Assembly: GCF_001194135.2 (NCBI RefSeq)
Contig: NC_068989.1
Coordinates: 20,397,642-20,458,141 of the forward strand
Length of the DNA stretch: 60,500 nt
Direction: 5' to 3'
Source of the DNA: Octopus bimaculoides
Taxonomy: Eukaryota
Part shown: positions 901 to 59,930 of the stretch, piece after piece
How positions within the stretch are numbered: position 1 is the first letter of the stretch
Layout of the letters: every line of letters begins with the position of its first letter
The notes under the pieces: model-generated
Database searches by the model: none
The model's input: only the letters and a program-made list of their open reading frames with translations
Told to the model about the DNA's origin: nothing
Program-made: the position numbers and the translations under genes

Positions 901-2168
901 CAAGGTGCATTCCAGAAATTTGAAGACTCTTTCCGCAGGGCCATTTATTAATTTAATTTCAAAGGAGTACGAAACTCTGAGCTCCTTCAAACTAGGATCT
1001 TCTGATTTCAATGCACTTGTAGCTCTCCAGCCATTTCATGAAGGCCCCTTGGAAACTTTCCAAAGTGAAAGTGTCTAGGATCATTGTCACAGCCTGTTTC
1101 ATTTTCTCAAAATCTTAAAAACGACTGCACCCGAGGTTCTCCCTGGGATTGGGGAACAACCCAAAGTCACGGGGAGCAACACCTGGACTGTAAGGAGAGT
1201 AAGAGATAGTTTTGATGTATATCACTGTCAAGTATTTGGTTACCAGGATAGAATTGTGGATTGGCACATTGTTCTGATGCAGGTGTCACCAATCCGAGTG
1301 GAAGAGCTCTGGCCTTTTGTCACAAAATCTCTTCATGAACTGCCTCAAAACCTCCACAAAATACTCTGTCGACCGTCTGGTCAGAAGGAATCCACTAGAC
1401 ATAGATGATACCCTTGCAGTCGAAAAAAAGTGATTATCAAGACCTTCTCGGTGGACTTGCTTTCCTGACATTCTTGAATCTGGGGGGAGCCACGATACTT
1501 CCATTGGGTACTTTGTCCCTTGGTGTCTGGATCATAACTGCCACTAAGAGACTCATGTCTTCTTAGATTGAAGGAAATGAGCTTAAATTTCTATCACCAA
1601 AAAAGTATCTTTCCTTCTGTTCGTCACTGAGTACCCTGGGAACAAATTTTGCACAAATTTGCACAAATTTTGCGCATACTCAGATCTTCATGTATAATTT
1701 TGTGTACATTTGGCACCAACTCCAAACTGTATGCTTATTGTTTTTTATAAATATACAATAGTATTCATCCCAAAAATTGCGAATTTTCTCAATTTGCCCA
1801 GATGTTCTGTCGTCCCTCTCCCCCTGCACTTCTTATCGTCTCTCACTTGCTCTCTAACGTCCTTGAACCTCTTGTGCCAGCAAAAAACTTTCAACTCACA
1901 CAAGTTAATCTATGAGCAGTCTCGATAATTTCATAAATTTCTGTAGCGCTGTAGCGTTTTTGTTCCATTTAACACAAACGTTTATTGCATAATGAGTTTC
2001 CAAATTGTCAACACATCCACACTATGTTCTACAAACTAGTCATCTGTGATACAGCTGTCTCCTCCAATCTGAAAGAAAAATATTGGCAGACCAGTTTATT
2101 AGATATATAAAATTACAATAACCTACTTCACCTAACAAAATATCTCAAACCATCTGGAATGCACCTCT
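901..2168 (-). mobile_element. Full-length decayed mariner DNA transposon
   Basis: Imperfect TIRs (left CAAGGTGCATTCCAGA at 901; right end reverse-complements to AGAGGTGCATTCCAGA) with TA at 2169-2170. Minus-strand translation gives frameshifted mariner motifs: EYFVEVLRQFMKRFCDKRPELF, W*HLHQNNVPIHNSILVTKYLT, SPYSPGVAPRDFGLFP (cf. YSPDLAPCDF). Confidence 0.9.

Positions 2169-2389: not shown

Positions 2390-2420
<31 letters not shown>
2183..2420. repeat. Compound (CA)n/(TA)n microsatellite
   Basis: Direct inspection; explains the HT/CV-repeat ORFs in the track. Confidence 0.95.
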
Positions 2421-2424
<4 letters not shown>

Positions 2425-3984
2425 ATTACTGTATTTCACGGCGTCGAAGACGATACTTTTTCCTAAAATAAGTCTTGGAAATCTACCATACGTCCTGAAA
2501 GGTGCATTTTTCATAGGCATATCCTAACTCCAGAGGAAAATTACCTATGCTAGACAGTAACCTGAACCCCTGTATATGACTGCTCAGTGAAGTGTATAAA
2601 TTATACTTTGTTAAAGTAGTAAATAAACAAACGAATCATAACTATTCTTTAAATATACGCAATAATAAATATTCATTTCCGTATGGGTAGTGTAAGTTAG
2701 ACGAGACAACTGACGAGAGATATTTTACATGTGTATCTATATTTCCGGTATGGTCACTCTCTTCTAACAACTTGATTTTAAGGGAACATTATTAAGTGTC
2801 GAAAGAAGTAAAACTGCAATATGTTAAGAGGATTTACAAGCAAATATTAATGACAACACTCTCGTAATCACTTACTCTCTGTGAGCAACATAAGCTTCCT
2901 CCTTGATCTCTGAAAGTCATGGTTTTAGCCAGTTCAAACCTGCGCCTACTGATGTTAGGAGTGATCCGCAATTTTAGATTTTACTTAAAATGTTTAGCAC
3001 AACCGTTATTATGGCAACCTCAAGCAGAAAATAATCTTACGCAATTGGCTCCAGCCTACAAGTGATTGAATATGTTAAACAGCATGGCAATAGGGCTGCA
3101 GAGAGGTATTTTGGAGCACCGCCAACTGAGAAAATGATCCGCTACTGGAAGAATCAAGAAGACCTGTTGAAGCCTGCATCAAGACTTAAACATAACCTGC
3201 ATCAGACTGCAGCCAAGTGGCCAGAACTGGAGCAAGAGATGGAGTGGATAGCTGCGGAGAGAAATTCGGGTCTTGCAGTATTAATACAAATGATTATTAA
3301 TGAATCAAAAATGAGGGCAGTAGCACGAGGTCTGGATGATTTTCGTGGCATATCAAGCTGGTGCTACAAATTTATGAAGAGGCAATGAGAATGAAAACAA
3401 GAATAACACAAAAAATGCCTGAAGATTATGATAACAAAATAATCGAATTTCACAGTTTCATAATCAGAGTGAGAAAAGAGACTGACTACGAACTGGATCA
3501 TATTGGAAACATGGATGAGGTGTCACTAACGTTTGATGTGATATTAAATACAACAGTGGATATTAAAGGGTCCTAAACCGTAAGTGTAAAGACCTCTGGA
3601 CATGAGAAAACCCATTATACTGCGGTACTATCGTGTTGCGGTGATGGAACAAAACTTTCACCACTGCTTATTTTCAAGGGGAAAAGGGGTAGATTAATGA
3701 AAAAGGAGTGAAGTTATGGCTAGATAAGGTGTGGTCAAGGAGTTCCGGTGGCCTCCTTAAAAAACATCCTTCCTGTGCGGGACCAGTTTCGTGCCCACAA
3801 AACAAAGGCAGTGATCCCAGGTGGTTTAACAATCCAATTACAACCACTGGACGTATCAATCAACAAGCCTTTTAAGGCATTTCTGAAAGAAGTGTGGAAT
3901 CAGTAGATGAGAGCCAAGGACAATGACTTAACACCGACCGGTGGTTTAAAAAGGCTAAGAATTGCTTAGGTGTGTGAGAGTGGG

Positions 3985-4026
3985 TTAGGGTTAGGGTTAG
4001 GGTTAGGGTTAGGGTTAGGGTTAGGG
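3985..4026 (+). repeat. Interstitial telomeric repeat (TTAGGG)7
   Basis: Seven perfect TTAGGG units flanked by identical 19-mers TTAGGTGTGTGAGAGTGGG (3966-3984 and 4027-4045). Confidence 0.95.
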
Positions 4027-4115
4027 TTAGGTGTGTGAGAGTGGGTCCAGAAATCATGGAACGTTGTGAAAATTGAATTAGAAGTAAAAGCTTTTAAAAA
4101 TGTGACATCAGTAAT

Positions 4116-4526
4116 ACTCTTTTTTTTTTACTTGTTTCAGCCATTTGACTGTGGCTCTGCAGGAGCACCGCCTTTAGTCGAGCAAATCGACCCCAAGACT
4201 TATTCTTTGTAAGCCTAGAACTTATTCAATCGGTCTCTTTTTGCCGAACCGCTAAGTTACGGGGACGTAAACACACCAGCATCGGTTGTCAAGCGATGGT
4301 GGGGGGACAAACACAGACACACAAACACACATACATAAATATATATATATATACATATATACGACGGGCTTCTTTCAGTTTCCGTCTACCAAATCCACTC
4401 ACAAGGATTTGGTCGGCCCGAGGCTATAGTAGAAGACATTTGCCCAAGGTGCCACGCACTGGGACTGAACCCGGAACCATGTGGTTGGTAAGCAAGCTAC
4501 TTACCACACAGCCACTCCTGCGCCTA
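4116..4526 (-). mobile_element. tRNA-derived SINE, full length, inserted in the pogo ORF
   Basis: Minus-strand head TAGGCGCAGGAGTGGCTGTGTGGTAAG (A box) and GGTTCAGTCCC (B box); internal CA/TA tract; A-rich tail; TAAT duplicated at 4112-4115 and 4527-4530; related copies elsewhere in the window. Confidence 0.92.
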
Positions 4527-5213
4527 TAATGCATTAGATGGCACAGAAAATGACATTCTGTTTGAAGATAGTGACACTTCGGACAGTATCGACGACCCTG
4601 ATGATTTTTCTGGTTTTGGGGCTATGGATGACTGCAGTCAGTTTTCAGGAGTGAAATATTTCCCTTATATTCGTAGGTTTAATAATTACATACTTTTCAA
4701 TCTTTTTCCATTGTAACTTAATTGTAACGCTTGTTTTGCTATGTCCATGTGAAATTTTTACAAATGGTAATAACGTGAAATATTTTCAGGATTTGAAGAT
4801 TAAAATATGTTTTCTTATTTGTAATATTTTAACTGTGCAGATTTTAATCTCTGTTCTGTTTTTATCTTGTGCTATTTGGGATGTTATGTTTGCGTGCTAC
4901 TTCTATAAATGGTAGCAACAAGCTAAATCAGGATTTTATGATTGAAATATTTTTTATTGTGTAGATTTTACTGTAATCTTTATTTTATTTATATTTTGTT
5001 CTATTGGGATGTCATGCTCCTGTGGTAATTTTACAAAGTGTAACTGTGGAATAAAATATTATTCCGTATTTCTCGTAATAATTTTCCTATTGTAGAGTTT
5101 AGTTTTTCCTCTGACTAGGACAAAAAATACCGTATATGTTTACATCCAATACTAACAACATCATAAAATACTGCACCAGCTGTAGCCCCGTCCAATTGCA
5201 TTAACTTAGCGAT

Positions 5214-5243
5214 CAGTCAATCAATCAATCAATCAATCAATCA

Positions 5244-5287
<44 letters not shown>

Positions 5288-5355
5288 GTCTGTCCGCCTG
5301 TCTGTCTGTCCGTCTGTCCGTCTGTCCGTCTGTCCGTCCGTCCGTCCGTCTGTCC

Positions 5356-5408: not shown

Positions 5409-6059
5409 NNNNNNNNNNNNNNNNNNNNNNNNNNNNNNNNNNNNNNNNNNNNNNNNNNNNNNNNNNNNNNNNNNNNNNNNNNNNNNNNNNNNNNNNNNNN
5501 NNNNNNNNNNNNNNNNNNNNNNNNNNNNNNNNNNNNNNNNNNNNNNNNNNNNNNNNNNNNNNNNNNNNNNNNNNNNNNNNNNNNNNNNNNNNNNNNNNNN
5601 NNNNNNNNNNNNNNNNNNNNNNNNNNNNNNNNNNNNNNNNNNNNNNNNNNNNNNNNNNNNNNNNNNNNNNNNNNNNNNNNNNNNNNNNNNNNNNNNNNNN
5701 NNNNNNNNNNNNNNNNNNNNNNNNNNNNNNNNNNNNNNNNNNNNNNNNNNNNNNNNNNNNNNNNNNNNNNNNNNNNNNNNNNNNNNNNNNNNNNNNNNNN
5801 NNNNNNNNNNNNNNNNNNNNNNNNNNNNNNNNNNNNNNNNNNNNNNNNNNNNNNNNNNNNNNNNNNNNNNNNNNNNNNNNNNNNNNNNNNNNNNNNNNNN
5901 NNNNNNNNNNNNNNNNNNNNNNNNNNNNNNNNNNNNNNNNNNNNNNNNNNNNNNNNNNNNNNNNNNNNNNNNNNNNNNNNNNNNNNNNNNNNNNNNNNNN
6001 NNNNNNNNNNNNNNNNNNNNNNNNNNNNNNNNNNNNNNNNNNATATATATATATATATA

Positions 6060-6950: not shown

Positions 6951-7870
6951 GCAAATGTTTATACGTATACATGTAAGTATGTACCAACACGTATGTATAT
7001 ATACATATATATATACTGTGTGCGTTTATGTATATATANNNNNNNNNNNNNNNNNNNNNNNNNNNNNNNNNNNNNNNNNNNNNNNNNNNNNNNNNNNNNN
7101 NNNNNNNNNNNNNNNNNNNNNNNNNNNNNNNNNNNNNNNNNNNNNNNNNNNNNNNNNNNNNNNNNNNNNNNNNNNNNNNNNNNNNNNNNNNNNNNNNNNN
7201 NNNNNNNNNNNNNNNNNNNNNNNNNNNNNNNNNNNNNNNNNNNNNNNNNNNNNNNNNNNNNNNNNNNNNNNNNNNNNNNNNNNNNNNNNNNNNNNNNNNN
7301 NNNNNNNNNNNNNNNNNNNNNNNNNNNNNNNNNNNNNNNNNNNNNNNNNNNNNNNNNNNNNNNNNNNNNNNNNNNNNNNNNNNNNNNNNNNNNNNNNNNN
7401 NNNNNNNNNNNNNNNNNNNNNNNNNNNNNNNNNNNNNNNNNNNNNNNNNNNNNNNNNNNNNNNNNNNNNNNNNNNNNNNNNNNNNNNNNNNNNNNNNNNN
7501 NNNNNNNNNNNNNNNNNNNNNNNNNNNNNNNNNNNNNNNNNNNNNNNNNNNNNNNNNNNNNNNNNNNNNNNNNNNNNNNNNNNNNNNNNNNNNNNNNNNN
7601 NNNNNNNNNNNNNNNNNNNNNNNNNNNNNNNNNNNNNNNNNNNNNNNNNNNNNNNNNNNNNNNNNNNNNNNNNNNNNNNNNNNNNNNNNNNNNNNNNNNN
7701 NNNNNNNNNNNNNNNNNNNNNNNNNNNNNNNNNNNNNNNNNNNNNNNNNNNNNNNNNNNNNNNNNNNNNNNNNNNNNNNNNNNNNNNNNNNNNNNNNNNN
7801 NNNNNNNNNNNNNNNNNNNNNNNNNNNNNNNNNNNNNNNNNNNNNNNNNNNTCTCTCTCTCTCTCTCTCT

Positions 7871-9270: not shown

Positions 9271-10317
9271 TTAAACACATAAACTAGTAAGATAGGAACA
9301 GAAGGTGACAAGTTAACCAACCGCCCTGGTGAAACAAGTGTTATTTTGAGAAAGTACAATAGAAATTATAGAATAAATGAGGTAAATACACGGAAGGCAA
9401 CTAGATTAAATCCATCCTATGTTTCAAGTTGTTATCTTAATTAGTTTATAGTTTTGACCGTTCAGTAGGAATCATGGTCGTATAAAAGAAAAAAAGCAAC
9501 AACAAAACAAAGAGTATAGGCAAAAGCTTGGTTCAGATAAAACGTCAAACCAAGGAACAGACGCGTACATATAAGACATATTCATTAGATTATAATATTT
9601 TAATATAGGAATTAGCACTGTACATACGCTTACACATCTTCCATCTAGTTTGTATATATACATATATGAGAACTTCAAGACATACTCACATTCGCATGCA
9701 CACGCACTCACGTTCATATATAGCCGTACAGTCATATATACAGATATATAGATATACCTACGCATGTGTGTGCGCGCATATATACATACATACGTATATA
9801 TATATATATATNNNNNNNNNNNNNNNNNNNNNNNNNNNNNNNNNNNNNNNNNNNNNNNNNNNNNNNNNNNNNNNNNNNNNNNNNNNNNNNNNNNNNNNNN
9901 NNNNNNNNNNNNNNNNNNNNNNNNNNNNNNNNNNNNNNNNNNNNNNNNNNNNNNNNNNNNNNNNNNNNNNNNNNNNNNNNNNNNNNNNNNNNNNNNNNNN
10001 NNNNNNNNNNNNNNNNNNNNNNNNNNNNNNNNNNNNNNNNNNNNNNNNNNNNNNNNNNNNNNNNNNNNNNNNNNNNNNNNNNNNNNNNNNNNNNNNNNNN
10101 NNNNNNNNNNNNNNNNNNNNNNNNNNNNNNNNNNNNNNNNNNNNNNNNNNNNNNNNNNNNNNNNNNNNNNNNNNNNNNNNNNNNNNNNNNNNNNNNNNNN
10201 NNNNNNNNNNNNNNNNNNNNNNNNNNNNNNNNNNNNNNNNNNNNNNNNNNNNNNNNNNNNNNNNNNNNNNNNNNNNNNTATATAAGTATATAATTATAAA
10301 AAAATAACTATGATTAA

Positions 10318-10938
10318 GGGCTCTGGAATGCCAGCGCCTATACATCAAAAGTAGATGTCAAATACCCACAATCCACTCTAAATTAGTTCTCTATTTATAA
10401 CCCTAGATCGGATGTGAAGTAATGGACAAAAAGATTTACAAAATTTCGGATAGTCCTATATCTTAAGATTTCAATGCTTTGCATTAGAAATTACTTTGCA
10501 ATCCTCACTAGAAATACACCGATAAACCTATGAACAAGAAATACATATACATACCGATAGATACCAATATATAGATGGATTTCCCGCGTCTCCATTCTAT
10601 CTGCTAGCCAATCTCGACCATGTGGTTAATGTCAGATATCATACGGTGTAAATACAATCCCGCAGCATAATGTAATGACTAGAGAACTTAAATATTATAC
10701 ATACTTATGAATTAAGAATATAATCATTTATATGTTTATCGGTGTATTTCTACTGTGGATTGCAAAGTAATTTCTAATGCAGAACATGAAATCTTATGAT
10801 ATAGGATTATCCGAAATTTTGTAAGTCTTCTTGCCCATTACCTCGTATCCTAGCTAGGGTTATAAAGGGAGAACCTATTTAGAGTGGATTGTATTTCATA
10901 TCTACTTGTAGCGTATAGGCGCTGACATTCCAGAGCCC
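10318..10938. mobile_element. Non-autonomous fold-back DNA transposon (MITE) with ~220-bp TIRs, TTAA-flanked, Kolobok-like termini
   Basis: TTAA|GGGCTCTGGAATG(C/T)CAGCGCCTATAC...; the arms align by eye through ...AGAAATACACCGATAAAC; TTAA at 10314-10317 and 10939-10942. Confidence 0.85.
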
Positions 10939-15919: not shown

Positions 15920-16148
15920 CGTATACCGCTTTGAAGGGTTTCGTCGAAAAAATCGACCCCATCCGACACCAAGTAATTATTTTTGTTTAAGTTTTTTACT
16001 TATTCTACTGGTCTCTTAGGTCAAACCGATAAGTTGCGGGATGTAAACAGTGGTTATCAAGTGATGGGAGAACAAACACAAAGACACATACATGCGCATA
16101 TGCACACACACATACACACACAAATATATATGTATGTATGTATGTATG

Positions 16149-16179
<31 letters not shown>

Positions 16180-16340
16180 ATATGTATGTATGTTATGTAT
16201 GTTTGCATGCATGTATACGGCAAATTTCCACAGATTTCTCACCAATCAGATTCACTAACATGACACTTGTCCGAAGTGCCATGCAGTCGATCTGAACCCG
16301 AAACCATTTGGTTGCAATGGATGCTTCTTAACCACGCACA
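15920..16340 (-). mobile_element. Degenerate tRNA-derived SINE (same family as 4116-4526)
   Basis: Shared segments (TCGACCCC, ACAAACACA, TGAACCCG...TGGTTG) and an internal (TATG)n tract. Confidence 0.8.
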
Positions 16341-19654: not shown

Positions 19655-20842
19655 ATGAAATGTCGCATTTTTAATTGTTATTTCAGTCATTTAAAAACTC
19701 AATTATGTATACCTTGCATTTAATCTTGACTCTTTTTCTTTCCCAACAATATTGGTATACAAATTCGTACCCACAGACCTTATTAAAAAGGATACCAACC
19801 GTCCTCTGCCGCAGAAGCTCTACGGAATATCAAGCGGGCCTTTAGTAATGGTTTTCTTAACATCAAAACTATTCAGAGATGGTTCCAAAGCTCTCGTTCA
19901 GGAGATGATAGCCTTGAAAATAAACCAAGGGGCAGGCCAAAATCAGTTATTCGGCACGGTGGTTTAAGTGCTTTGGTTGAACAAAATCCGAGAACAAAGG
20001 TTTGAAAACTTTCATTAGAACTGCAAACATATCGCACAACTGTTTTTGGACACCTGTAAAAAATTGGAAAAGTCAAGAAAACGGATAGGTTTGTTCCACA
20101 CACAAAAAAACAAAACAAAAAGAAACAGACGCCTCGAAGTGTGCTCCTCATTGCTTTCTCGGCTGGAAAAGACCATTTTTGCATCAGATCATTACTTGTG
20201 ATGAGAAATGGATACTCTTTGACAACAGTAGAACTGAACAGTGATTAGATGCAGGAGAGTCATCTAAACACTACCCAAAACCACTATTTCACCCTAAAAA
20301 GTCAGTGATCACTGTATGGTGGTCTACGAAGGGAGTTATTCATTATTCATTTGTGAAACAAGGAAAAACGATAACAGCAACATCGTATTGCCAGGAAATT
20401 GATTGTATGCATGAGAATTTGAAAAAGAAGCAACCCCGACTAGGGAATAAAGATGGACCAATTTTGGTCGACTGCGATGCACGTCCTCACACTCCTCAAG
20501 CTACGGTCCAAAAGTTACAAAGCCTGAATTATGAGATTCTGCAACATCCTCCTTGTTCCCCTAATATCTCTCCTACTGATCACCACTTATTCAAGCATTT
20601 TGAACTTTTCATAAGCAATAAAACATTCTTAAATAGAGAAGAGGTAATTGAAGCATTCGGACAGTTTATCACAGCAAAAGATGAATGTTTTTTAGGAATG
20701 GAATATATGACATAGAGAAACGTTGGGTAAACGTCACAAATGAACATGGATCATACTTTGACTAAATAAATCAGTTCTCTAACACTTCTGAAACATTTTA
20801 TTGTTACCTTTCAAATACGACATTTCATGTGAAACAACTTAA
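19655..20842 (+). mobile_element. Decayed mariner transposon (SETMAR/Hsmar1-like transposase)
   Basis: IITCDEKWILFDN; ITVWWSTKGVIHYSFVKQGKTITATSYCQEI; DARPHT; HPPCSPNISPTDHHLF. Right TIR ...ATACGACATTTCATGTGAAACAACTTAA-TA; inner part of left TIR ATGAAATGTCGCATTT. Confidence 0.92.
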
Positions 20843-26834: not shown

Positions 26835-27413
26835 TTCTTTTCATAATATACTCTAAATGGCCTCCCTGGTGCTGGAGGTACACTTGTATACGTCGCGCAA
26901 AATTGACAATCACTCAAATACATTTCGCTTTAGGGATTTCCCTGATTTAGGCTGCGATTGCTGCCTTCAGTTCACCAATCGTTTGAGGGTTGTTCTGGTA
27001 ACCATTATCCTTGACATACCCCGACAGATAAAAATCTGGGTGGGTTGAAGTCCAGTGAATGCGGTGCCCACACACCGTCACACTTCCTGCTCATCAGTCT
27101 CTCCTAAATCGCTCACTCAGCCACGCTAGGGAGTTATTTGATGCGTGGTGGGATGGCCCTGTCTTGTTGGAACCACTGTTCATCTCAATCTATTCCTCTG
27201 CGTCGTCTTAGTAGTGCCCAAAACCTCCTCAGAACTGCCACATAGCGCTCTGTATTTAGCGTTTGAGCACCGTCATTTTCGTCTTTGAACCAATATGGGC
27301 CGATGATGCCACGTTTATCGACTGCTGCCCATGCCGTGCACTTTGTTGAGTGTAACGATCTCTGAAACACTTCTTCCGGTGCGGACGTACCCCAATAAAC
27401 ATTATTTTTGCTG
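26835..27413 (-). mobile_element. Tc1/mariner (DD41D/rosa-like) transposase 3' part
   Basis: YWGTSAPEEVFQRSLHSTKCTAWAAVDKRGIIGPYWF; WFQQD; WAPHSLDFNPP; NNPQTIGELKAAI; QHQGGHLEYI. Confidence 0.88.
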
Positions 27414-28361
27414 NNNNNNNNNNNNNNNNNNNNNNNNNNNNNNNNNNNNNNNNNNNNNNNNNNNNNNNNNNNNNNNNNNNNNNNNNNNNNNNNNNNNNNN
27501 NNNNNNNNNNNNNNNNNNNNNNNNNNNNNNNNNNNNNNNNNNNNNNNNNNNNNNNNNNNNNNNNNNNNNNNNNNNNNNNNNNNNNNNNNNNNNNNNNNNN
27601 NNNNNNNNNNNNNNNNNNNNNNNNNNNNNNNNNNNNNNNNNNNNNNNNNNNNNNNNNNNNNNNNNNNNNNNNNNNNNNNNNNNNNNNNNNNNNNNNNNNN
27701 NNNNNNNNNNNNNNNNNNNNNNNNNNNNNNNNNNNNNNNNNNNNNNNNNNNNNNNNNNNNNNNNNNNNNNNNNNNNNNNNNNNNNNNNNNNNNNNNNNNN
27801 NNNNNNNNNNNNNNNNNNNNNNNNNNNNNNNNNNNNNNNNNNNNNNNNNNNNNNNNNNNNNNNNNNNNNNNNNNNNNNNNNNNNNNNNNNNNNNNNNNNN
27901 NNNNNNNNNNNNNNNNNNNNNNNNNNNNNNNNNNNNNNNNNNNNNNNNNNNNNNNNNNNNNNNNNNNNNNNNNNNNNNNNNNNNNNNNNNNNNNNNNNNN
28001 NNNNNNNNNNNNNNNNNNNNNNNNNNNNNNNNNNNNNNNNNNNNNNNNNNNNNNNNNNNNNNNNNNNNNNNNNNNNNNNNNNNNNNNNNNNNNNNNNNNN
28101 NNNNNNNNNNNNNNNNNNNNNNNNNNNNNNNNNNNNNNNNNNNNNNNNNNNNNNNNNNNNNNNNNNNNNNNNNNNNNNNNNNNNNNNNNNNNNNNNNNNN
28201 NNNNNNNNNNNNNNNNNNNNNNNNNNNNNNNNNNNNNNNNNNNNNNNNNNNNNNNNNNNNNNNNNNNNNNNNNNNNNNNNNNNNNNNNNNNNNNNNNNNN
28301 NNNNNNNNNNNNNNNNNNNNNNNNNNNNNNNNNNNNNNNNNNNNNNNNNNNNNNNNNNNNN

Positions 28362-37502: not shown

Positions 37503-37650
37503 TACGCAGGCGCCGCTATGTGGTTAAGAAGCTTGCTATGTGGTCATAGGTTGAGTCCCACGGCGTTTACTATTATAGTACCGGTTCACCAAAGCCTTTT
37601 GAATGACTTTGGTAGACGGAAACTGAAAGAAGCATATCGTATAAACATGT
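37503..37650 (+). mobile_element. 5' part of a SINE (family of 4116)
   Basis: CGCAGGCGCCGCTATGTGGTTAAGAAGCTTGC...GGTAGACGGAAACTGAAAGAAGC. Confidence 0.8.
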
Positions 37651-37726
37651 ATATATATATANNNNNNNNNNNNNNNNNNNNNNNNNNNNNNNNNNNNNNN
37701 NNNNNNNNNNNNNNNNNNNNNNNNNN

Positions 37727-38947: not shown

Positions 38948-39946
38948 TATGTGTCTGTGTGTCTGTGTTTGCGTTGCGTTTGTCCCCCCCTCACTGCTTG
39001 ACAACAGTGTTAGTTTGTTTACTTCTTCTTAACTGGCCGGTTCAGCAAAAGAGAATTGATAGCATATAATATTATACTTGAAAGTATAAGTAGTGGGGGT
39101 CGACTTATTTGGCTAAACTGTTCGAGCTGGTAACTGAAACACATAATAAAAAATAAAAGATATACCGCATAGCTTCCTTAGATGAGCCTCATAATCCATT
39201 ATCGTATTAAAAATGCTCAACACTCCATCAGTAAAAAATTTTTAAAACGTTTGGCATTTTATGTGCATTTTCTAATTACTGAAACTAACAAAAATTAAGT
39301 ATAGAAGAATAGATATGACATTTCTAAGATACACATATGTAACAGCAGAAAACGTGTGTAAATTTTGTTAATATTTTAAATAACTTAAATATCTAAAGTT
39401 TACTGCAAGTGGTTCGGGAATTCAATAAGTTTGTCGCTCTTGTAAGAATCGTACATATCTTCATAAGATGTATCTTTGTAAAATAAATTTACAATTACTT
39501 GTATCGTTTTACTTGTAGTCGACTTTATATAAATTCAGAGATAGTTTCTCTTCATATTTTTTACAAGCATGTATACAAACGTATAAACACATATTTATAC
39601 AAATATAATTGACACTAACAGTAACACTAAGAAAACATAAATATATTGATTTCTGTTTCTATTATTACAGTTTTGATTCGTTGTTAATTTTATCGCATCT
39701 CATACATTTACGTTCTATATTTGTTTCATTGAGATGCATCTTGTAGAAATAATGTCATTAATGTTTTCTATTAACATGTAAAATTCAGTAGTTTGTTAAC
39801 TAGAAGGAATATTGAATTAAAGTAGTTTCTGAAATAGTTACATTATATCAGAATTCAGCAATCATTAAAAATTAAATAAATATAGGACATCTCCTATTTC
39901 CTCTCGAATATATTATATGTAATGGTAATTGTGTGCGTGCGTATGT

Positions 39947-41656: not shown

Positions 41657-41679
41657 TTTTTTAATTCTTGTATTCGTTT

Positions 41680-41885
41680 GCTTGTTTCAGTCATTAGACT
41701 GCGGCCATTCTGAGGCACCATCTTGAAGAGCTTTAGTCGAATGAATCGACCACAGTACTTCTTTTAAAGCCTGCTCCTTATTTTATTGGTAAATTTGCCG
41801 AACCGCTAAGTTACGAGGACGTAAACACACCGACACTGCTTGTCAAGCGGTGGCGGGGAACAAACACAAACATACACACACAAAT
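41680..41885 (-). mobile_element. 3' half of a SINE (family of 4116)
   Basis: CTTGTTTCAGTCATT.GACTGCGGCCAT; TTTGCCGAACCGCTAAGTTACG.GGACGTAAACACACC. Confidence 0.85.
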
Positions 41886-42174
41886 ATATATATATTTTAA
41901 TTTATGTATATATTAATATTATCTCGGTTGAAAAAACTTCGATAATGTAAATATGTTAATAGTTACCAGGGTAGCAAAAAAACACACAAAAACTGGGAAA
42001 AATATACCCGTTTAATAGGTAGAAATAAATTGTTAAAGTGATATATTTGAGTAGATATGAGGAAAAATAATAAATAGAGCAAAACGCATATAATCAAGGA
42101 ACTTGTTGATTATATGCGTTTTGCTCCATTTCTTATTTTTCTTCATATCTACTCATAATATATATATATATATA

Positions 42175-46740: not shown

Positions 46741-46769
46741 GCAAGTTTTATGCTTTATTCGATTTCTTT

Positions 46770-47024
46770 TATTCTTTTTATCTTTTACTTGTTTCAGTCA
46801 TTGCATTGCGGCCACGCTGGGGCACCGCATTGAAAGGTTTAGACGAACAAATCGATGTCAGTACTTCTTTTTAAGTTTGTCACTTATTCTATCGACGACT
46901 ATTGTTTAACTGGTAGGTTACGGAGACGTAAGCAAAGTAACTTCAGTTACTAAGCGATAACAATGGTTAAACAAAATACAAATACAAAGACAGATAGATA
47001 TATACATATAAACATACGTATGTT

Positions 47025-47629: not shown

Positions 47630-48283
47630 TTACAGAAAAACAAAAGACAAAGACAAGTGTATAAGCAACACAAAAGTGTATTAGTTTAACACCCGGGAAG
47701 GTGAGAAAGTCTTTTACATTTCGAGCCTACGCTCTTCAGCAGAAAGGAACAGGAAAAAATAAACAGAGAGAGAATAAAAAGGTTCAGCGGCTAGCGGTCA
47801 ATCATGGCGGCTGGCAGGACAGGAGTGGTTAGACAAGAGAACTAAGAAGAAGGGGAGATAATAAAGTATTGGTGAACCCAAAATGAAGGTGCACGTGCGT
47901 GTGTAGGTGAGAGCGTGTAAGTGTGATCGTGTGGATAGGGGCTGGTATGATGTGGTGATGTGTGGTGTGACATGATGTGGTGTGGTGGTGTGTGGTGTAT
48001 TGTGGGTGCTGGGAAGTGGTCAGTGCAAGTGTGTGTGGGGTGGTGTGATGTGGTGTGGTGTGTGATGTGTGGTATGTTGTGTTGTGGTGGTGTGGTGTGA
48101 TGTGTGGTGTGTTGTGTTGTGGTATGGTGGTGTTGGGGTGTGAGGATGCGAGGATGGGCGTGAGGATGCGAGGGTGGGGTGTGAGGATGTGAAGATGGGT
48201 TGTAGGGATGTGAGGGTAGGGTGTGGGTTTGGGGTGATGATGTGAAGGTAGGAGTGGGGTATGCGAGAGTAGGATATGTGGGT
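47630..48283 (-). mobile_element. PLE pLTR-like segment with low-complexity C/A-rich tract
   Basis: Contains the HHR at 47711-47746 downstream (minus strand) of a CAC/CCA-rich tract; no ORF seen; truncated by a gap. Confidence 0.5.
47711..47746 (-). ncRNA. Minimal hammerhead ribozyme, C6 core variant
   Basis: CUUU-CUGCUGA-A-GAGC(guag)GCUC-GAAA-UG-UA-AAAG. Confidence 0.65.
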
Positions 48284-49255
48284 NNNNNNNNNNNNNNNNN
48301 NNNNNNNNNNNNNNNNNNNNNNNNNNNNNNNNNNNNNNNNNNNNNNNNNNNNNNNNNNNNNNNNNNNNNNNNNNNNNNNNNNNNNNNNNNNNNNNNNNNN
48401 NNNNNNNNNNNNNNATATATATATATATACAACAGGTTTCATTCAATTTCCGTCAACAAATCCACTCACAAGCCCTTGGTCAGCCCGGAGTGAGAGGAAA
48501 AAACACTTTACCCAAGGTGCCGCGCAGTGGGATTGAACTCAAGAATACATGTCTGGAAAAATAATATAAAACAAAACAAATTCTTGAAGACCTTTTGTTT
48601 TCTTTGGTTTTTCTGTTGCGAGTTGCAAGTAAAATTCTCCAACTTATGCTAACTTTTCTTATTAATTATAAATACGATTATGATTGCTGCAGGTGAGGCT
48701 GTTAACTTCACAGCTAATCACAGTAGAACCTGCGCAGAACTAGATTTAGCCCCAAAGAATGGAAATTGGTAACCCTGATTTTATATACTCAAACTCTATT
48801 TTCTCTTTTCTTTCATAAGAGTGGGTCGAGGGTTGGTGATGGAAAGTTCACTAATTTTGAGGCTGGGCTGGTATTTGTCAAATTTTTTGACTGTTGTTGT
48901 AGGGTATGCTGTTTTTTTTTTACTTTGTCTTCATATATTAACGTCTACCTTTGAGGTTTACGATTTCAATGTATTTTTTTGTTGTTTGTTTTTTGCTTGT
49001 TCCTTTTGTATTCATTATGTAATTTGGTTTTAGAAGTGTCCTGCTTAAATTGCTGACATCATTTTGGCTTTGTGACTGTATAGTCTTCAGTTAGTTTCGT
49101 GTTAGGATCCAAACTTACGTTGGCATCAAAGTCATTTTCACTTAAAATCTGGTACGGATATATTATATTTTCGAACTGGCAGCATGATATGCATGGATGA
49201 GAAAAACGTATTCCTTTCGTATCCACTTATATCTTTTCTACTTTATTCGTAGGAA

Positions 49256-58847: not shown

Positions 58848-59930
58848 TGTCTGATAGAACTACTCGGGATCTTCGTCTTCAAAACCTCAAACAACGCTTA
58901 CTGAAAGACAATATCCACCCTCACTCATAGACGTGGGAATTAAACGTGCCAAAAAATTAGACATACAAACACTAAGAACAACAAAACGTAACACCACACC
59001 TCATCTCAAAACATTACTATTCATATCAACACACAACCCCAGAAACTGTCAGGCATTCAACACTATTGTGCAAAATCTTCCTTTACTAAATAGAGATCCA
59101 TAAATGAACGACATCCTGAAAACGCACAAAATCATCAAATGCAAAAAGCAACACAAATCGCTAAAGAGACTGCTAACAAATGCAAAGCTTTACAGGACGC
59201 CCAAACCGTGGAACCTGCCCCAACTTACTTGAAGGCTCGGATTTCCTTTTCAAACGAGGACAGAGGTTCACAATTGAAACTAGTTCCACTTGTGCCTCTG
59301 AGAACCCAATTTATGTAATAACCTGCTCGGGTTGCGGACACAACTATATTGGACAGACGAGGATGACCTTGAGACGGAGAACCACTCTACATAAAGAGCA
59401 AATCCGTTTCCCGCAATACAGGCAAATTCTCTTCTGTGAACGTATAGAAAAATGTGCAGATAACATCAACCCAAATTTCACAGTCTTCCCCTTCTACCAG
59501 TGCAAACATACAACCTCTCCACAAGAACGTTTAAATAAAGAAACTTTTTTCATTGAAAAATGCAGAACACGTCTTAATATGCACGCATAGCCATCTTTTA
59601 CATATTTTAATTCACGATTACATCACTGCACATAAATCTCCTCATTAAACAAGTTTTTCGAAACTTTTTTTTTGTGTGTATATATATATATTCCCCTCTC
59701 CTTACCGAAAGCCGAACTGTTACCTCCCTTGCCCAAAACAACAACAGTAATAACGATAACCAATTACGTCCCCTTATTTTTCTACTTGTGAAGTCATTCA
59801 CTCGTAAATATCATCACACACAACATGGACAAAAATTTCTTGTTAAGAAAATACATACTCACATAAGTAAACTTTAATATCATGAATAGCGAACGCGAAA
59901 CCGGTAGATATATTAAAAATGATATTAAAA
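58848..59930 (+). mobile_element. Penelope-like element 3' part: RT thumb/linker, GIY-YIG endonuclease, pLTR
   Basis: SDRTTRDLRLQNLKQRLL; HNPRN; KSLKRLLTNA; ORF 59180-59590 GRPNRGTCP...SSTCASENPIYVITCSGCGHNYIGQTRMTLRRRTTLHKEQIR...ERLNKETFFI...LN. Confidence 0.92.
59877..59911 (+). ncRNA. Minimal hammerhead ribozyme with A3:U8 core variant
   Basis: AUAUC-AUGAAUA-GCG(aa)CGC-GAAA-CCGG-UA-GAUAU; 5-bp helix I, palindromic ACCGGU helix III, GUA triplet. Confidence 0.7.

What the first reader, a model, noticed from the sequence alone, without database searches (positions are those of the whole stretch)
3966..4045. (TTAGGG)7 inserted with a perfect 19-bp duplication: likely telomerase-healed break inside a transposase
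Seen: TTAGGTGTGTGAGAGTGGG-(TTAGGG)7-TTAGGTGTGTGAGAGTGGG. The left copy ends in GGG, in register for addition of TTAGGG; the right copy begins with TTAGG, giving microhomology to the added repeats. Removing one copy and the array largely restores the pogo V-C-E-W-V-Q-K-S-W region, apart from a 2-nt frameshift. Established: TTAGGG is the usual molluscan telomere repeat, and short interstitial telomeres with target duplications are attributed to telomerase action at staggered breaks in vertebrates. Inference: a young event of that kind in an invertebrate, datable against the host element.
Basis: partly seen in the sequence, partly recalled or inferred. Interest (0 to 1): 0.7.

Follow-up and report, generated by a model that had tools for sequence, protein, structure and literature searches.

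The report
Telomere-repeat insertion in a dead transposon
Seven perfect copies of the telomere repeat TTAGGG, flanked by a perfect 20-bp duplication of the target, were inserted into an already decayed pogo transposon of an octopus-like genome; this matches a kind of break-repair scar well described in mammals, so it is a clean but ordinary example in a new animal group.

Summary
Window 3985-4026 is exactly (TTAGGG)7. It lies between two identical copies of TTAGGTGTGTGAGAGTGGGT (3966-3985 and 4027-4046), so the duplication is 20 bp, one more than reported. The host is a degenerate pogo/Tigger transposase copy. Ten related proteins and three related DNA copies, one from Octopus vulgaris, read straight through this site with one copy of the segment and no array. 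The 61 bp are therefore an insertion. Both copies of the duplicated segment carry this copy's private defects (CAG>TAG stop, TGC>TGT, +2 nt), so the insertion came after the decay. There are no changes in 82 positions, so it is comparatively young. The target ends in GGGT and begins with TTAGG, both in register with the array. This matches the 'duplication' class of short interstitial telomeric sequences in primates and rodents (duplications of 5-187 bp, mostly 11-18 bp), which is attributed to telomerase acting during double-strand-break repair. Telomerase is the best-supported agent but was not shown here. Templated copying of telomeric DNA and retroelement-type reverse transcription of telomeric RNA fit the same anatomy. 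Read support, the orthologous empty site and a genome-wide census could not be obtained. Verdict: a new member of a known kind, of modest interest.

The parts
3966..3985 (+). Left copy of the duplicated target, TTAGGTGTGTGAGAGTGGGT. Its last 4 bases (GGGT) are in register with the array.
   Evidence: It aligns to the single-copy segment CAGGTGTGCGAGTGGGT of the relatives L001, L002 and L003.
3985..4026 (+). Perfect (TTAGGG)7. The first T is shared with the left target copy, so 41 nt are unambiguously new.
   Evidence: Absent from all relatives.
4027..4046 (+). Right copy of the duplicated target, identical to the left copy. Its first 5 bases (TTAGG) continue the array's phase.
2739..5209 (+). 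Host: a degenerate pogo/Tigger-family transposon copy. HTH_Tnp_Tc5 and DDE_1 are recognisable across several stops and frameshifts. The coding homology runs from about 3035 to about 4603. The copy is interrupted by the array and by a SINE-like insertion at 4120-4526.
   Evidence: Translation. Pfam DDE_1 at 1.2e-10 and HTH_Tnp_Tc5 at 2.7e-5. 762 homologues with E<=1e-10. DNA homology to L001, L002 and L003.

Best explanation
This is a short interstitial telomeric sequence. A chromosome break inside an already dead pogo transposon copy was repaired with addition of telomere repeats, most likely by telomerase. Inferred route: a top-strand 3' end ...GAGAGTGGG(T) paired through its 3-4 terminal bases with the telomerase RNA template and was extended by about seven TTAGGG units. 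The new tail, ending ...TTAGG-3', then annealed to the complement of the TTAGG that starts the same 20-bp segment. That complement lay either on the other end of a break staggered by 20 nt, or on the sister chromatid or homologue. Fill-in synthesis re-copied the 20 bp, giving target-array-target. What is shown: it is an insertion, it has a 20-bp target duplication, both junctions are in register, and it came after the host copy's private mutations. What is inferred: the enzyme, the geometry of the break, and germ-line fixation. The array has no demonstrated function; it is a repair scar.
For: 1. Structure: a perfect 20-bp duplication flanks a perfect (TTAGGG)7, far beyond chance.
2. Empty site: ten related transposases read ...KRPTITQVCEWVKxSW... 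without interruption. Three related DNA copies have one copy of the segment and no array. These are L001 (76-77% identical), L002 (80-84%) and the O. vulgaris copy L003 (77-86%), which reads GCTCAGGTGAGCGAGTGGGTCCAG. PMC2246262 uses the same repeat-consensus logic for arrays inside repeats (Table 1 footnote).
3. Order of events: CAG>TAG, TGC>TGT and the +2 nt are private to the window copy and present in both copies of the duplication.
4. Register: GGGT at the upstream junction and TTAGG at the downstream junction. The chance is about 4^-3 to 4^-4 for the first and 4^-5 for the second.
5. Precedent (PMC2246262): species-specific arrays in mouse, rat, human and chimpanzee were inserted at breaks. 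A 'duplication' class makes up 4.6% of rodent and 16% of primate events, with duplications of 11, 18, 14, 5, 187, 12, 15 and 15 bp, arrays of 35-127 bp and 0-3 nt in register. [quoted passage not shown] Rodent loci that carry other pieces of telomerase RNA implicate telomerase directly.
6. The review PMC6410037 cites telomerase-dependent insertion of telomeric sequence at drug-induced breaks in human cells.
7. TTAGGG is the octopod telomere motif by FISH.
Against: Nothing in a single locus identifies the polymerase. The same two microhomologies are expected for retroelement-type priming on UUAGGG RNA and for template switching to telomeric DNA. No template-adjacent telomerase-RNA bases are present, and those were the strongest telomerase signature in rodents. 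Telomerase action at internal breaks has not, to my knowledge, been documented at sequence level in molluscs, and my literature searches found nothing. The window is a gapped draft assembly, and reads, a second assembly of the same species and the orthologous locus were all out of reach. The species is inferred only from shared repeat families with Octopus vulgaris.
Confidence: 0.55

Rival explanations
1. Telomeric DNA was copied or captured without telomerase. In one version, a broken or stalled 3' end ...GGGT switched template to a telomere or an extrachromosomal telomeric fragment through 4-nt microhomology, copied about 41 nt, and returned through TTAGG microhomology 20 nt behind its exit point (MMBIR/FoSTeS or polymerase-theta-type templated insertion). 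In the other version, a double-stranded telomeric fragment was ligated into a filled-in staggered break.
For: Microhomology at both junctions is the hallmark of such pathways, and a 'return behind the exit point' yields a duplication without any staggered cut. Capture of telomeric fragments is the alternative named by the authors of the vertebrate work (PMC2246262). Telomerase-independent 'targeted telomere insertion' is described for ALT cells (PMC6410037).
Against: The seven units are perfectly canonical. [quoted passage not shown] Templated insertions by polymerase theta are usually shorter and copied from nearby sequence (general knowledge, not tested here).
Confidence: 0.18
2. A retroelement reverse transcriptase (LINE or Penelope-like) made the insert by target-primed reverse transcription. 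An endonuclease nicked the bottom strand at 5'-CCTAA^GCAAT-3'. The CCTAA-3' end primed on an RNA ending in UUAGGG repeats, either telomeric-repeat RNA or a retroposon with such a tail truncated to the tail alone. A second nick 20 nt downstream gave the target-site duplication.
For: A 20-bp duplication is typical of LINE-type insertions. The array abuts a downstream copy that starts with 5 bases complementary to the would-be primer, exactly as A-rich duplications abut poly(A) tails (mechanism from general knowledge of L1). The genome has active-looking retroposition: a SINE-like insert with an A10 tail lies 75 bp away, and a GIY-YIG (Penelope-type) endonuclease remnant sits at 59180-59590. Endonuclease-free Penelope-like elements are known to use telomere-complementary 3' ends to prime on G-rich ends (PMC8557442).
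Against: There is no non-telomeric element sequence and no A-tail in the insert. The neighbouring SINE-like element uses poly(A), so its partner would be expected to leave an A-tail. I found no report of retroposed pure telomeric RNA. In cephalopods the Naiad group of Penelope-like elements is reported as long inactive. One event gives no target-site consensus.
Confidence: 0.12
3. The structure is an assembly, gap-closing or library artefact, or a somatic or heterozygous allele not representative of the species. The true sequence would have one copy of the 20-mer and no array.
For: The window is a draft assembly with 17 N gaps. The structure is suspiciously perfect. Telomeric reads are abundant in any library. 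No independent copy of this locus could be retrieved.
Against: Both junctions need reads that join unique pogo sequence to telomeric repeats, because the overlap with telomeric reads is only 4-5 nt, too short for an assembler or gap closer. The array lies inside a 5.4-kb N-free stretch. No other short-range duplications occur in the window, and none occur at gaps. The coordinated duplication with in-register ends has a biological precedent.
Confidence: 0.05
4. The array grew in place by replication slippage from a telomere-like seed, or it belongs to the pogo family itself.
For: The target contains TTAGG and GGGT, which are fragments of the motif.
Against: No relative has even two units here. 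The two fragments are 11 nt apart in the target. Slippage cannot duplicate the non-repetitive 20-mer on the far side of the array.
Confidence: 0.01

Closest known systems
Short interstitial telomeric sequences inserted at double-strand breaks, 'duplication' class (Nergadze et al. 2004; 2007 = PMC2246262)
   Same: A few dozen bp of perfect species-type telomere repeat at an internal site, absent from the ancestral or consensus sequence. It is flanked by a duplication of the target, which is 5-187 bp (mostly 11-18 bp) in mouse, rat, human and chimpanzee. [quoted passage not shown] Young arrays are free of mismatches.
   Different: The host is a cephalopod-like mollusc, not a vertebrate. Both junctions are in register, 4 nt and 5 nt. 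The empty site here comes from paralogous transposon copies, not from an orthologous locus. The 5-nt downstream homology was itself created by a private C>T change in the dead transposon.
Chromosome healing (de novo telomere addition at a broken end)
   Same: Telomerase primes on a non-telomeric 3' end with 1-5 nt of homology to its template (citing the healing literature).
   Different: Healing makes a new chromosome end and loses the distal fragment. Here the same pogo copy continues immediately after the array, and 56 kb of scaffold follow.
LINE-type target-primed reverse transcription (tail-only, 5'-truncated insertions)
   Same: A target-site duplication of about 20 bp. The repeat tail abuts the downstream copy, whose first bases match the tail. 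There is microhomology at the upstream junction.
   Different: There is no element body, no poly(A), no known RNA with this tail, and no target-site consensus from a single event.
Endonuclease-deficient Penelope-like elements (Athena, Coprina)
   Same: A reverse transcriptase related to telomerase primes on G-rich 3' ends through telomere-complementary RNA (PMC8557442).
   Different: Those elements sit at chromosome ends and bring their own body sequence. Nothing but telomere repeats is present here.

Membership tests
Short interstitial telomeric sequence inserted at a break (duplication class) | A short head-to-tail array of the species' own telomere repeat at an internal position | tested here: met
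   (TTAGGG)7 at 3985-4026, with 56 kb of scaffold on one side and 4 kb on the other. The motif is that of octopods by FISH according to PMC13218726 and PMC6160780. The species is inferred from repeat families shared with O. vulgaris, not known.
Short interstitial telomeric sequence inserted at a break (duplication class) | Array absent from the ancestral sequence (orthologous empty locus or repeat consensus) | tested here: met
   Tested by the repeat-consensus route. Ten proteins and three DNA copies, L001, L002 and L003, all lack it. The orthologous locus was not obtained; L003 appears paralogous.
Short interstitial telomeric sequence inserted at a break (duplication class) | Target sequence duplicated on both sides of the array | tested here: met
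   Perfect 20-bp direct repeat at 3966-3985 and 4027-4046. The published range is 5-187 bp, mostly 11-18 bp.
Short interstitial telomeric sequence inserted at a break (duplication class) | [quoted passage not shown] | tested here: met
   GGG(T) ends the upstream copy in phase, and TRF places the in-phase run at 3982-4031.
Short interstitial telomeric sequence inserted at a break (duplication class) | Synthesis by telomerase | not testable with these tools
   No telomerase-RNA-derived extra bases are present. Testing needs a census or an experiment.
Chromosome healing / terminal de novo telomere | Array is terminal and the distal sequence is lost | tested here: not met
   The pogo coding sequence resumes at 4047 in the same order as in relatives.
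Non-LTR / Penelope-like retroposon insertion | Target-site duplication with the 3' tail next to the downstream copy | tested here: met
   Formally met if the array is taken as the tail.
Non-LTR / Penelope-like retroposon insertion | Element-derived body sequence, or poly(A) or family-specific 3' end, within the insert | tested here: not met
   The 41-42 inserted bases are telomere repeat only.
Non-LTR / Penelope-like retroposon insertion | Recurrent endonuclease target motif at the upstream edge of the duplication | not testable with these tools
   There is a single event, and no genome-wide access to this species.
pogo/Tigger DNA transposon (the host element) | CENP-B-type HTH plus DDE_1 transposase | tested here: met
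   Pfam hits on the stitched translation: DDE_1 at 41.6 bits and HTH_Tnp_Tc5 at 24.5 bits, both above cut-off. 56-64% identity to named pogo-derived proteins.
pogo/Tigger DNA transposon (the host element) | Terminal inverted repeats and a TA target duplication | tested here: inconclusive
   No convincing terminal inverted repeats were found in 2400-5300. The ends are obscured by microsatellites, a mariner-like insert and an N gap.

The most novel reading that the evidence does not exclude
The insert was not made by telomerase. A retroelement reverse transcriptase would have nicked the target and primed on telomeric-repeat RNA, so that cephalopod genomes would carry 'retroposed telomere repeats' with LINE-like 20-bp target-site duplications. 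That would be a route to interstitial telomeric arrays not described so far.
Probability: 0.12. Interest if true: 0.6.

Novelty: new member of a known kind. Interest (0 to 1): 0.3.

Why it matters
If the telomerase reading holds, this locus extends a break-repair route documented in primates and rodents to a lophotrochozoan. That would suggest that telomere-repeat addition at internal breaks is an old, general property of animals with TTAGGG telomeres. The locus is unusually legible. The dead transposon supplies the pre-insertion sequence, its private mutations give the order of events, and both junction homologies are visible. One of them, TTAGG, exists only because of an earlier C>T change in the decaying copy. 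On its own it is a single scar without function. Its value is as a seed for a genome-wide census that could separate telomerase from retroelement machinery, and as a presence/absence marker for dating among octopus lineages.

Tried and rejected
- Same-locus sequence from other assemblies or read sets. Exact-product look-ups of window ORFs, including the 61-aa minus-strand ORF that spans the array, found nothing. A homology search with the 108-aa pogo ORF found only two proteins, none near-identical. Assemblies built with k=31 would in any case break inside a 42-bp telomeric array, so I ran no further search on this.
- Orthology of the O. vulgaris copy L003. The window and L003 are collinear only across the transposon and a few pieces just upstream of it. 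There are no unique collinear matches in 35 kb against 55 kb downstream. I treat L003 as a paralogue, so it gives no species-level dating.
- Element ends. No convincing inverted terminal repeats were found.
- Other telomeric arrays to compare. There are none in the window. The only other one is a (CCCTAA)3 in L003, inside a hairpin-like inverted repeat and without direct-repeat flanks.
- Rfam and tRNA scans of the window gave no hits.
- The 2004 primate paper (PMC515315) is not held, so I used the 2007 paper and its supplementary tables.
- I prepared a six-frame ORF set to look for a host exon that could lead to the orthologous locus and then dropped it. Everything recognisable was transposon-derived and the chance of success was low.
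- Rejected readings: in-place slippage, a family-borne array, and strict chromosome healing (see the rival explanations and the membership tests).

Full report
**What is there.** The window reads ...AATTGC-[TTAGGTGTGTGAGAGTGGGT]-TAGGG(TTAGGG)6-[TTAGGTGTGTGAGAGTGGGT]-CCAGAAATC.... The identity continues for one more base, so the direct repeat is 20 bp and the net addition is 61 bp.

- TRF sees a single in-phase run at 3982-4031, with 8.3 units, 100% matches and no indels. The array's phase therefore runs 3-4 bases into the left copy (GGG, then T) and 5 bases into the right copy (TTAGG).
- Shuffles give zero expected matches for three telomere units or for the 20-mer with up to 3 mismatches.
- It is the only telomeric array in the window.
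- It is the only perfect short-range duplication of 16 bp or more that is not part of a tandem array, and none of the 17 N gaps is flanked by such a duplication.
- The array lies in an N-free stretch of 5.4 kb.

**The host.** The surrounding 2.5 kb is a decayed pogo/Tigger-type transposon on the + strand. Stitching the three frames gives a protein with HTH_Tnp_Tc5 and DDE_1 above Pfam's cut-offs and 762 homologues at E<=1e-10. The best are 56-64% identical, and several are named pogo-derived proteins. The copy has several stops and frameshifts. It is also split at 4119|4527 by a SINE-like insert with an A10 tail. It is the only copy of this family in the window.

**Is it an insertion?** Yes.

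- In an alignment with eleven relatives, the ten that cover this part of the protein read ...KRP(T/S)I(T/A)QVCEWV(K/L)xSW... without interruption across the site; the eleventh, P0072, ends upstream of it.
- Three DNA relatives were retrieved. Two are read-set contigs, L001 and L002. The third is a copy on Octopus vulgaris chromosome record OX597821.1, L003.
- All three have one copy of the segment and no array:

| Copy | Sequence at the site |
|---|---|
| L001 | ATTACTCAGGTGTGCGAGTGGGTTC |
| L002 | ATTTCTCAGGTGTGCAAGGGGGTCA |
| L003 | GTTGCTCAGGTGAGCGAGTGGGTCC |

- Against these, the window's segment has three private changes: CAG>TAG (a stop), TGC>TGT, and two extra bases (GAG>GAGAG).
- All three changes are present in both copies of the duplication. 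They therefore arose in the dead transposon before the array arrived.
- The C>T that made the stop also created the TTAGG at the start of the target.

**Age.** There are no differences between the two 20-mers and none within the 42-bp array. Zero changes in 82 positions gives a 95% upper bound of about 3.7% per-site divergence. The host copy has at least 26 private substitutions in 660 comparable columns (3.9%), counted only where the three relatives agree. The insertion is therefore younger than most of the host's decay, but 'very young' is not proven.

**Organism.** The source is hidden. Three observations place it near Octopus:

- The closest named relative of the pogo ORF is an Octopus vulgaris protein, 80% identical over the part covered.
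- The O. vulgaris locus holds a copy 77-86% identical at DNA level.
- The window's SINE-like repeat has an 89% identical copy there, and another short repeat a 94% identical copy.

The window is therefore from an octopod or a close relative. TTAGGG is the only experimentally determined cephalopod telomere motif. It was found by FISH in Amphioctopus areolatus (Adachi et al. 2014), as cited in PMC13218726 and PMC6160780.

**How it most likely arose.** The anatomy matches a class described in mammals. PMC2246262 shows the following:

- Species-specific short interstitial telomeric arrays in mouse, rat, human and chimpanzee were inserted at break sites.
- The flank was left unchanged, or carried a deletion, an addition or a duplication. 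Duplications are 4.6% of rodent and 16% of primate events.
- The listed duplications are 11, 18, 14, 5, 187, 12, 15 and 15 bp, next to arrays of 35-127 bp, with 0-3 bases in register.
- Some rodent loci also carry other parts of the telomerase RNA.
- For arrays inside repeats, the authors used the repeat consensus as the empty site, as I did here.

The review PMC6410037 adds that telomerase-dependent insertion at induced breaks has been seen in human cells. On that basis telomerase extension of the ...GGG(T) 3' end is the best-supported reading, with a probability of about 0.55. In this reading the new ...TTAGG tail then annealed to the complement of the target's own TTAGG, and the 20 bp were re-copied.

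A 20-nt staggered break is one way to obtain the duplication. Priming on the sister chromatid or homologue after extension is another. The sequence does not tell them apart.

**Rivals.** Both junction homologies are symmetrical in what they allow.

- *Retroelement reverse transcription (about 0.12).* The bottom-strand end ...CCTAA-3' could equally have primed reverse transcription of an RNA ending in UUAGGG repeats after an endonuclease nick, and a 20-bp duplication is LINE-like. Against this: the insert has no element body and no A-tail, the neighbouring SINE-like element uses poly(A), and I found no report of such retroposition.
- *Template switching to, or capture of, telomeric DNA (about 0.18).* This also uses microhomology at both ends.
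- *An assembly artefact (about 0.05).* This is unlikely because both junctions need reads that join unique sequence to telomere repeats over only 4-5 shared bases. It could not be excluded without reads.
- *In-place slippage or a family-borne array.* The relatives refute both.
- *Strict 'chromosome healing'.* This does not apply, because the transposon continues on the far side.

**Comparison and novelty.** This works like, and meets the testable criteria of, the duplication class of short interstitial telomeric sequences. The one defining claim I could not test is the enzyme. It is a new member of a known kind, in a phylum where my searches found no sequence-level description. A specialist would find it neat rather than surprising.

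**What was not possible.** I could not obtain read support, the orthologous locus in other octopods, or a census of similar arrays. The look-ups found no other record of this locus, and the O. vulgaris copy is apparently a paralogue.

Noticed in passing
window 4120-4526 (minus strand): A SINE-like repeat with an A10 tail (T10 at 4121-4130 on the + strand) splits the pogo copy 75 bp downstream of the array. The flanks 4119|4527 are contiguous in L002 and L003. Fragments of the same repeat lie at 16262-16314, 37588-37661, 38964-39054, 41677-41895, 46769-47010 and 48415-48538. An 89% identical copy is in O. vulgaris at L003 32472-32856. Its target duplication is not clear, and ARAGORN calls no tRNA.
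   Followed up: partly
window 59180-59590 (+): A 136-aa ORF with a GIY-YIG catalytic domain just above Pfam's cut-off (23.1 bits). This is the endonuclease type of Penelope-like retroelements, whose reverse transcriptases are the closest relatives of telomerase. No reverse-transcriptase part was looked for.
   Followed up: no
window 20305-20715 (+); also 1115-1504 (-) and 27185-27413 (-): Mariner-type transposase remnants. Pfam Transposase_1 scores 1.5e-15 for the first. The other two are judged by eye from the ORF translations. The one at about 1100-2050 lies between blocks that are adjacent in the O. vulgaris copy.
   Followed up: partly
L003 16071-16151 (Octopus vulgaris OX597821.1): (CCCTAA)3 at 16108-16125 sits in the loop of a 20-nt, 95% complementary inverted repeat (16071-16090 and 16132-16151), about 500 bp beyond the O. 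vulgaris pogo copy. It has no direct-repeat flanks, and its origin is unexplained.
   Followed up: partly
L003 9491-14271: The O. vulgaris pogo copy is rearranged. A 220-bp block is inverted relative to window 2511-2729, with a perfect 21-nt palindrome at the breakpoint (9710-9730 and 9733-9753). There are two extra tandem copies of a 185-bp pogo segment (10443-10627 and 10693-10877). About 3.9 kb of foreign sequence separates the two halves.
   Followed up: no
window 47943-48225: G/T-rich minisatellites (units of 5, 8, 21, 35 and 40-41 bp, for example TGGGGTGTGAGGATGCGAGGA) next to an N gap. They are not telomeric in sequence.
   Followed up: no
window, 17 N runs (for example 5409-6042, 7039-7851, 27414-28361): This is a gapped draft assembly. 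Most gaps are bordered by (TA)n, (AC)n or (ATCT)n microsatellites, so array lengths near gaps are unreliable.
   Followed up: no
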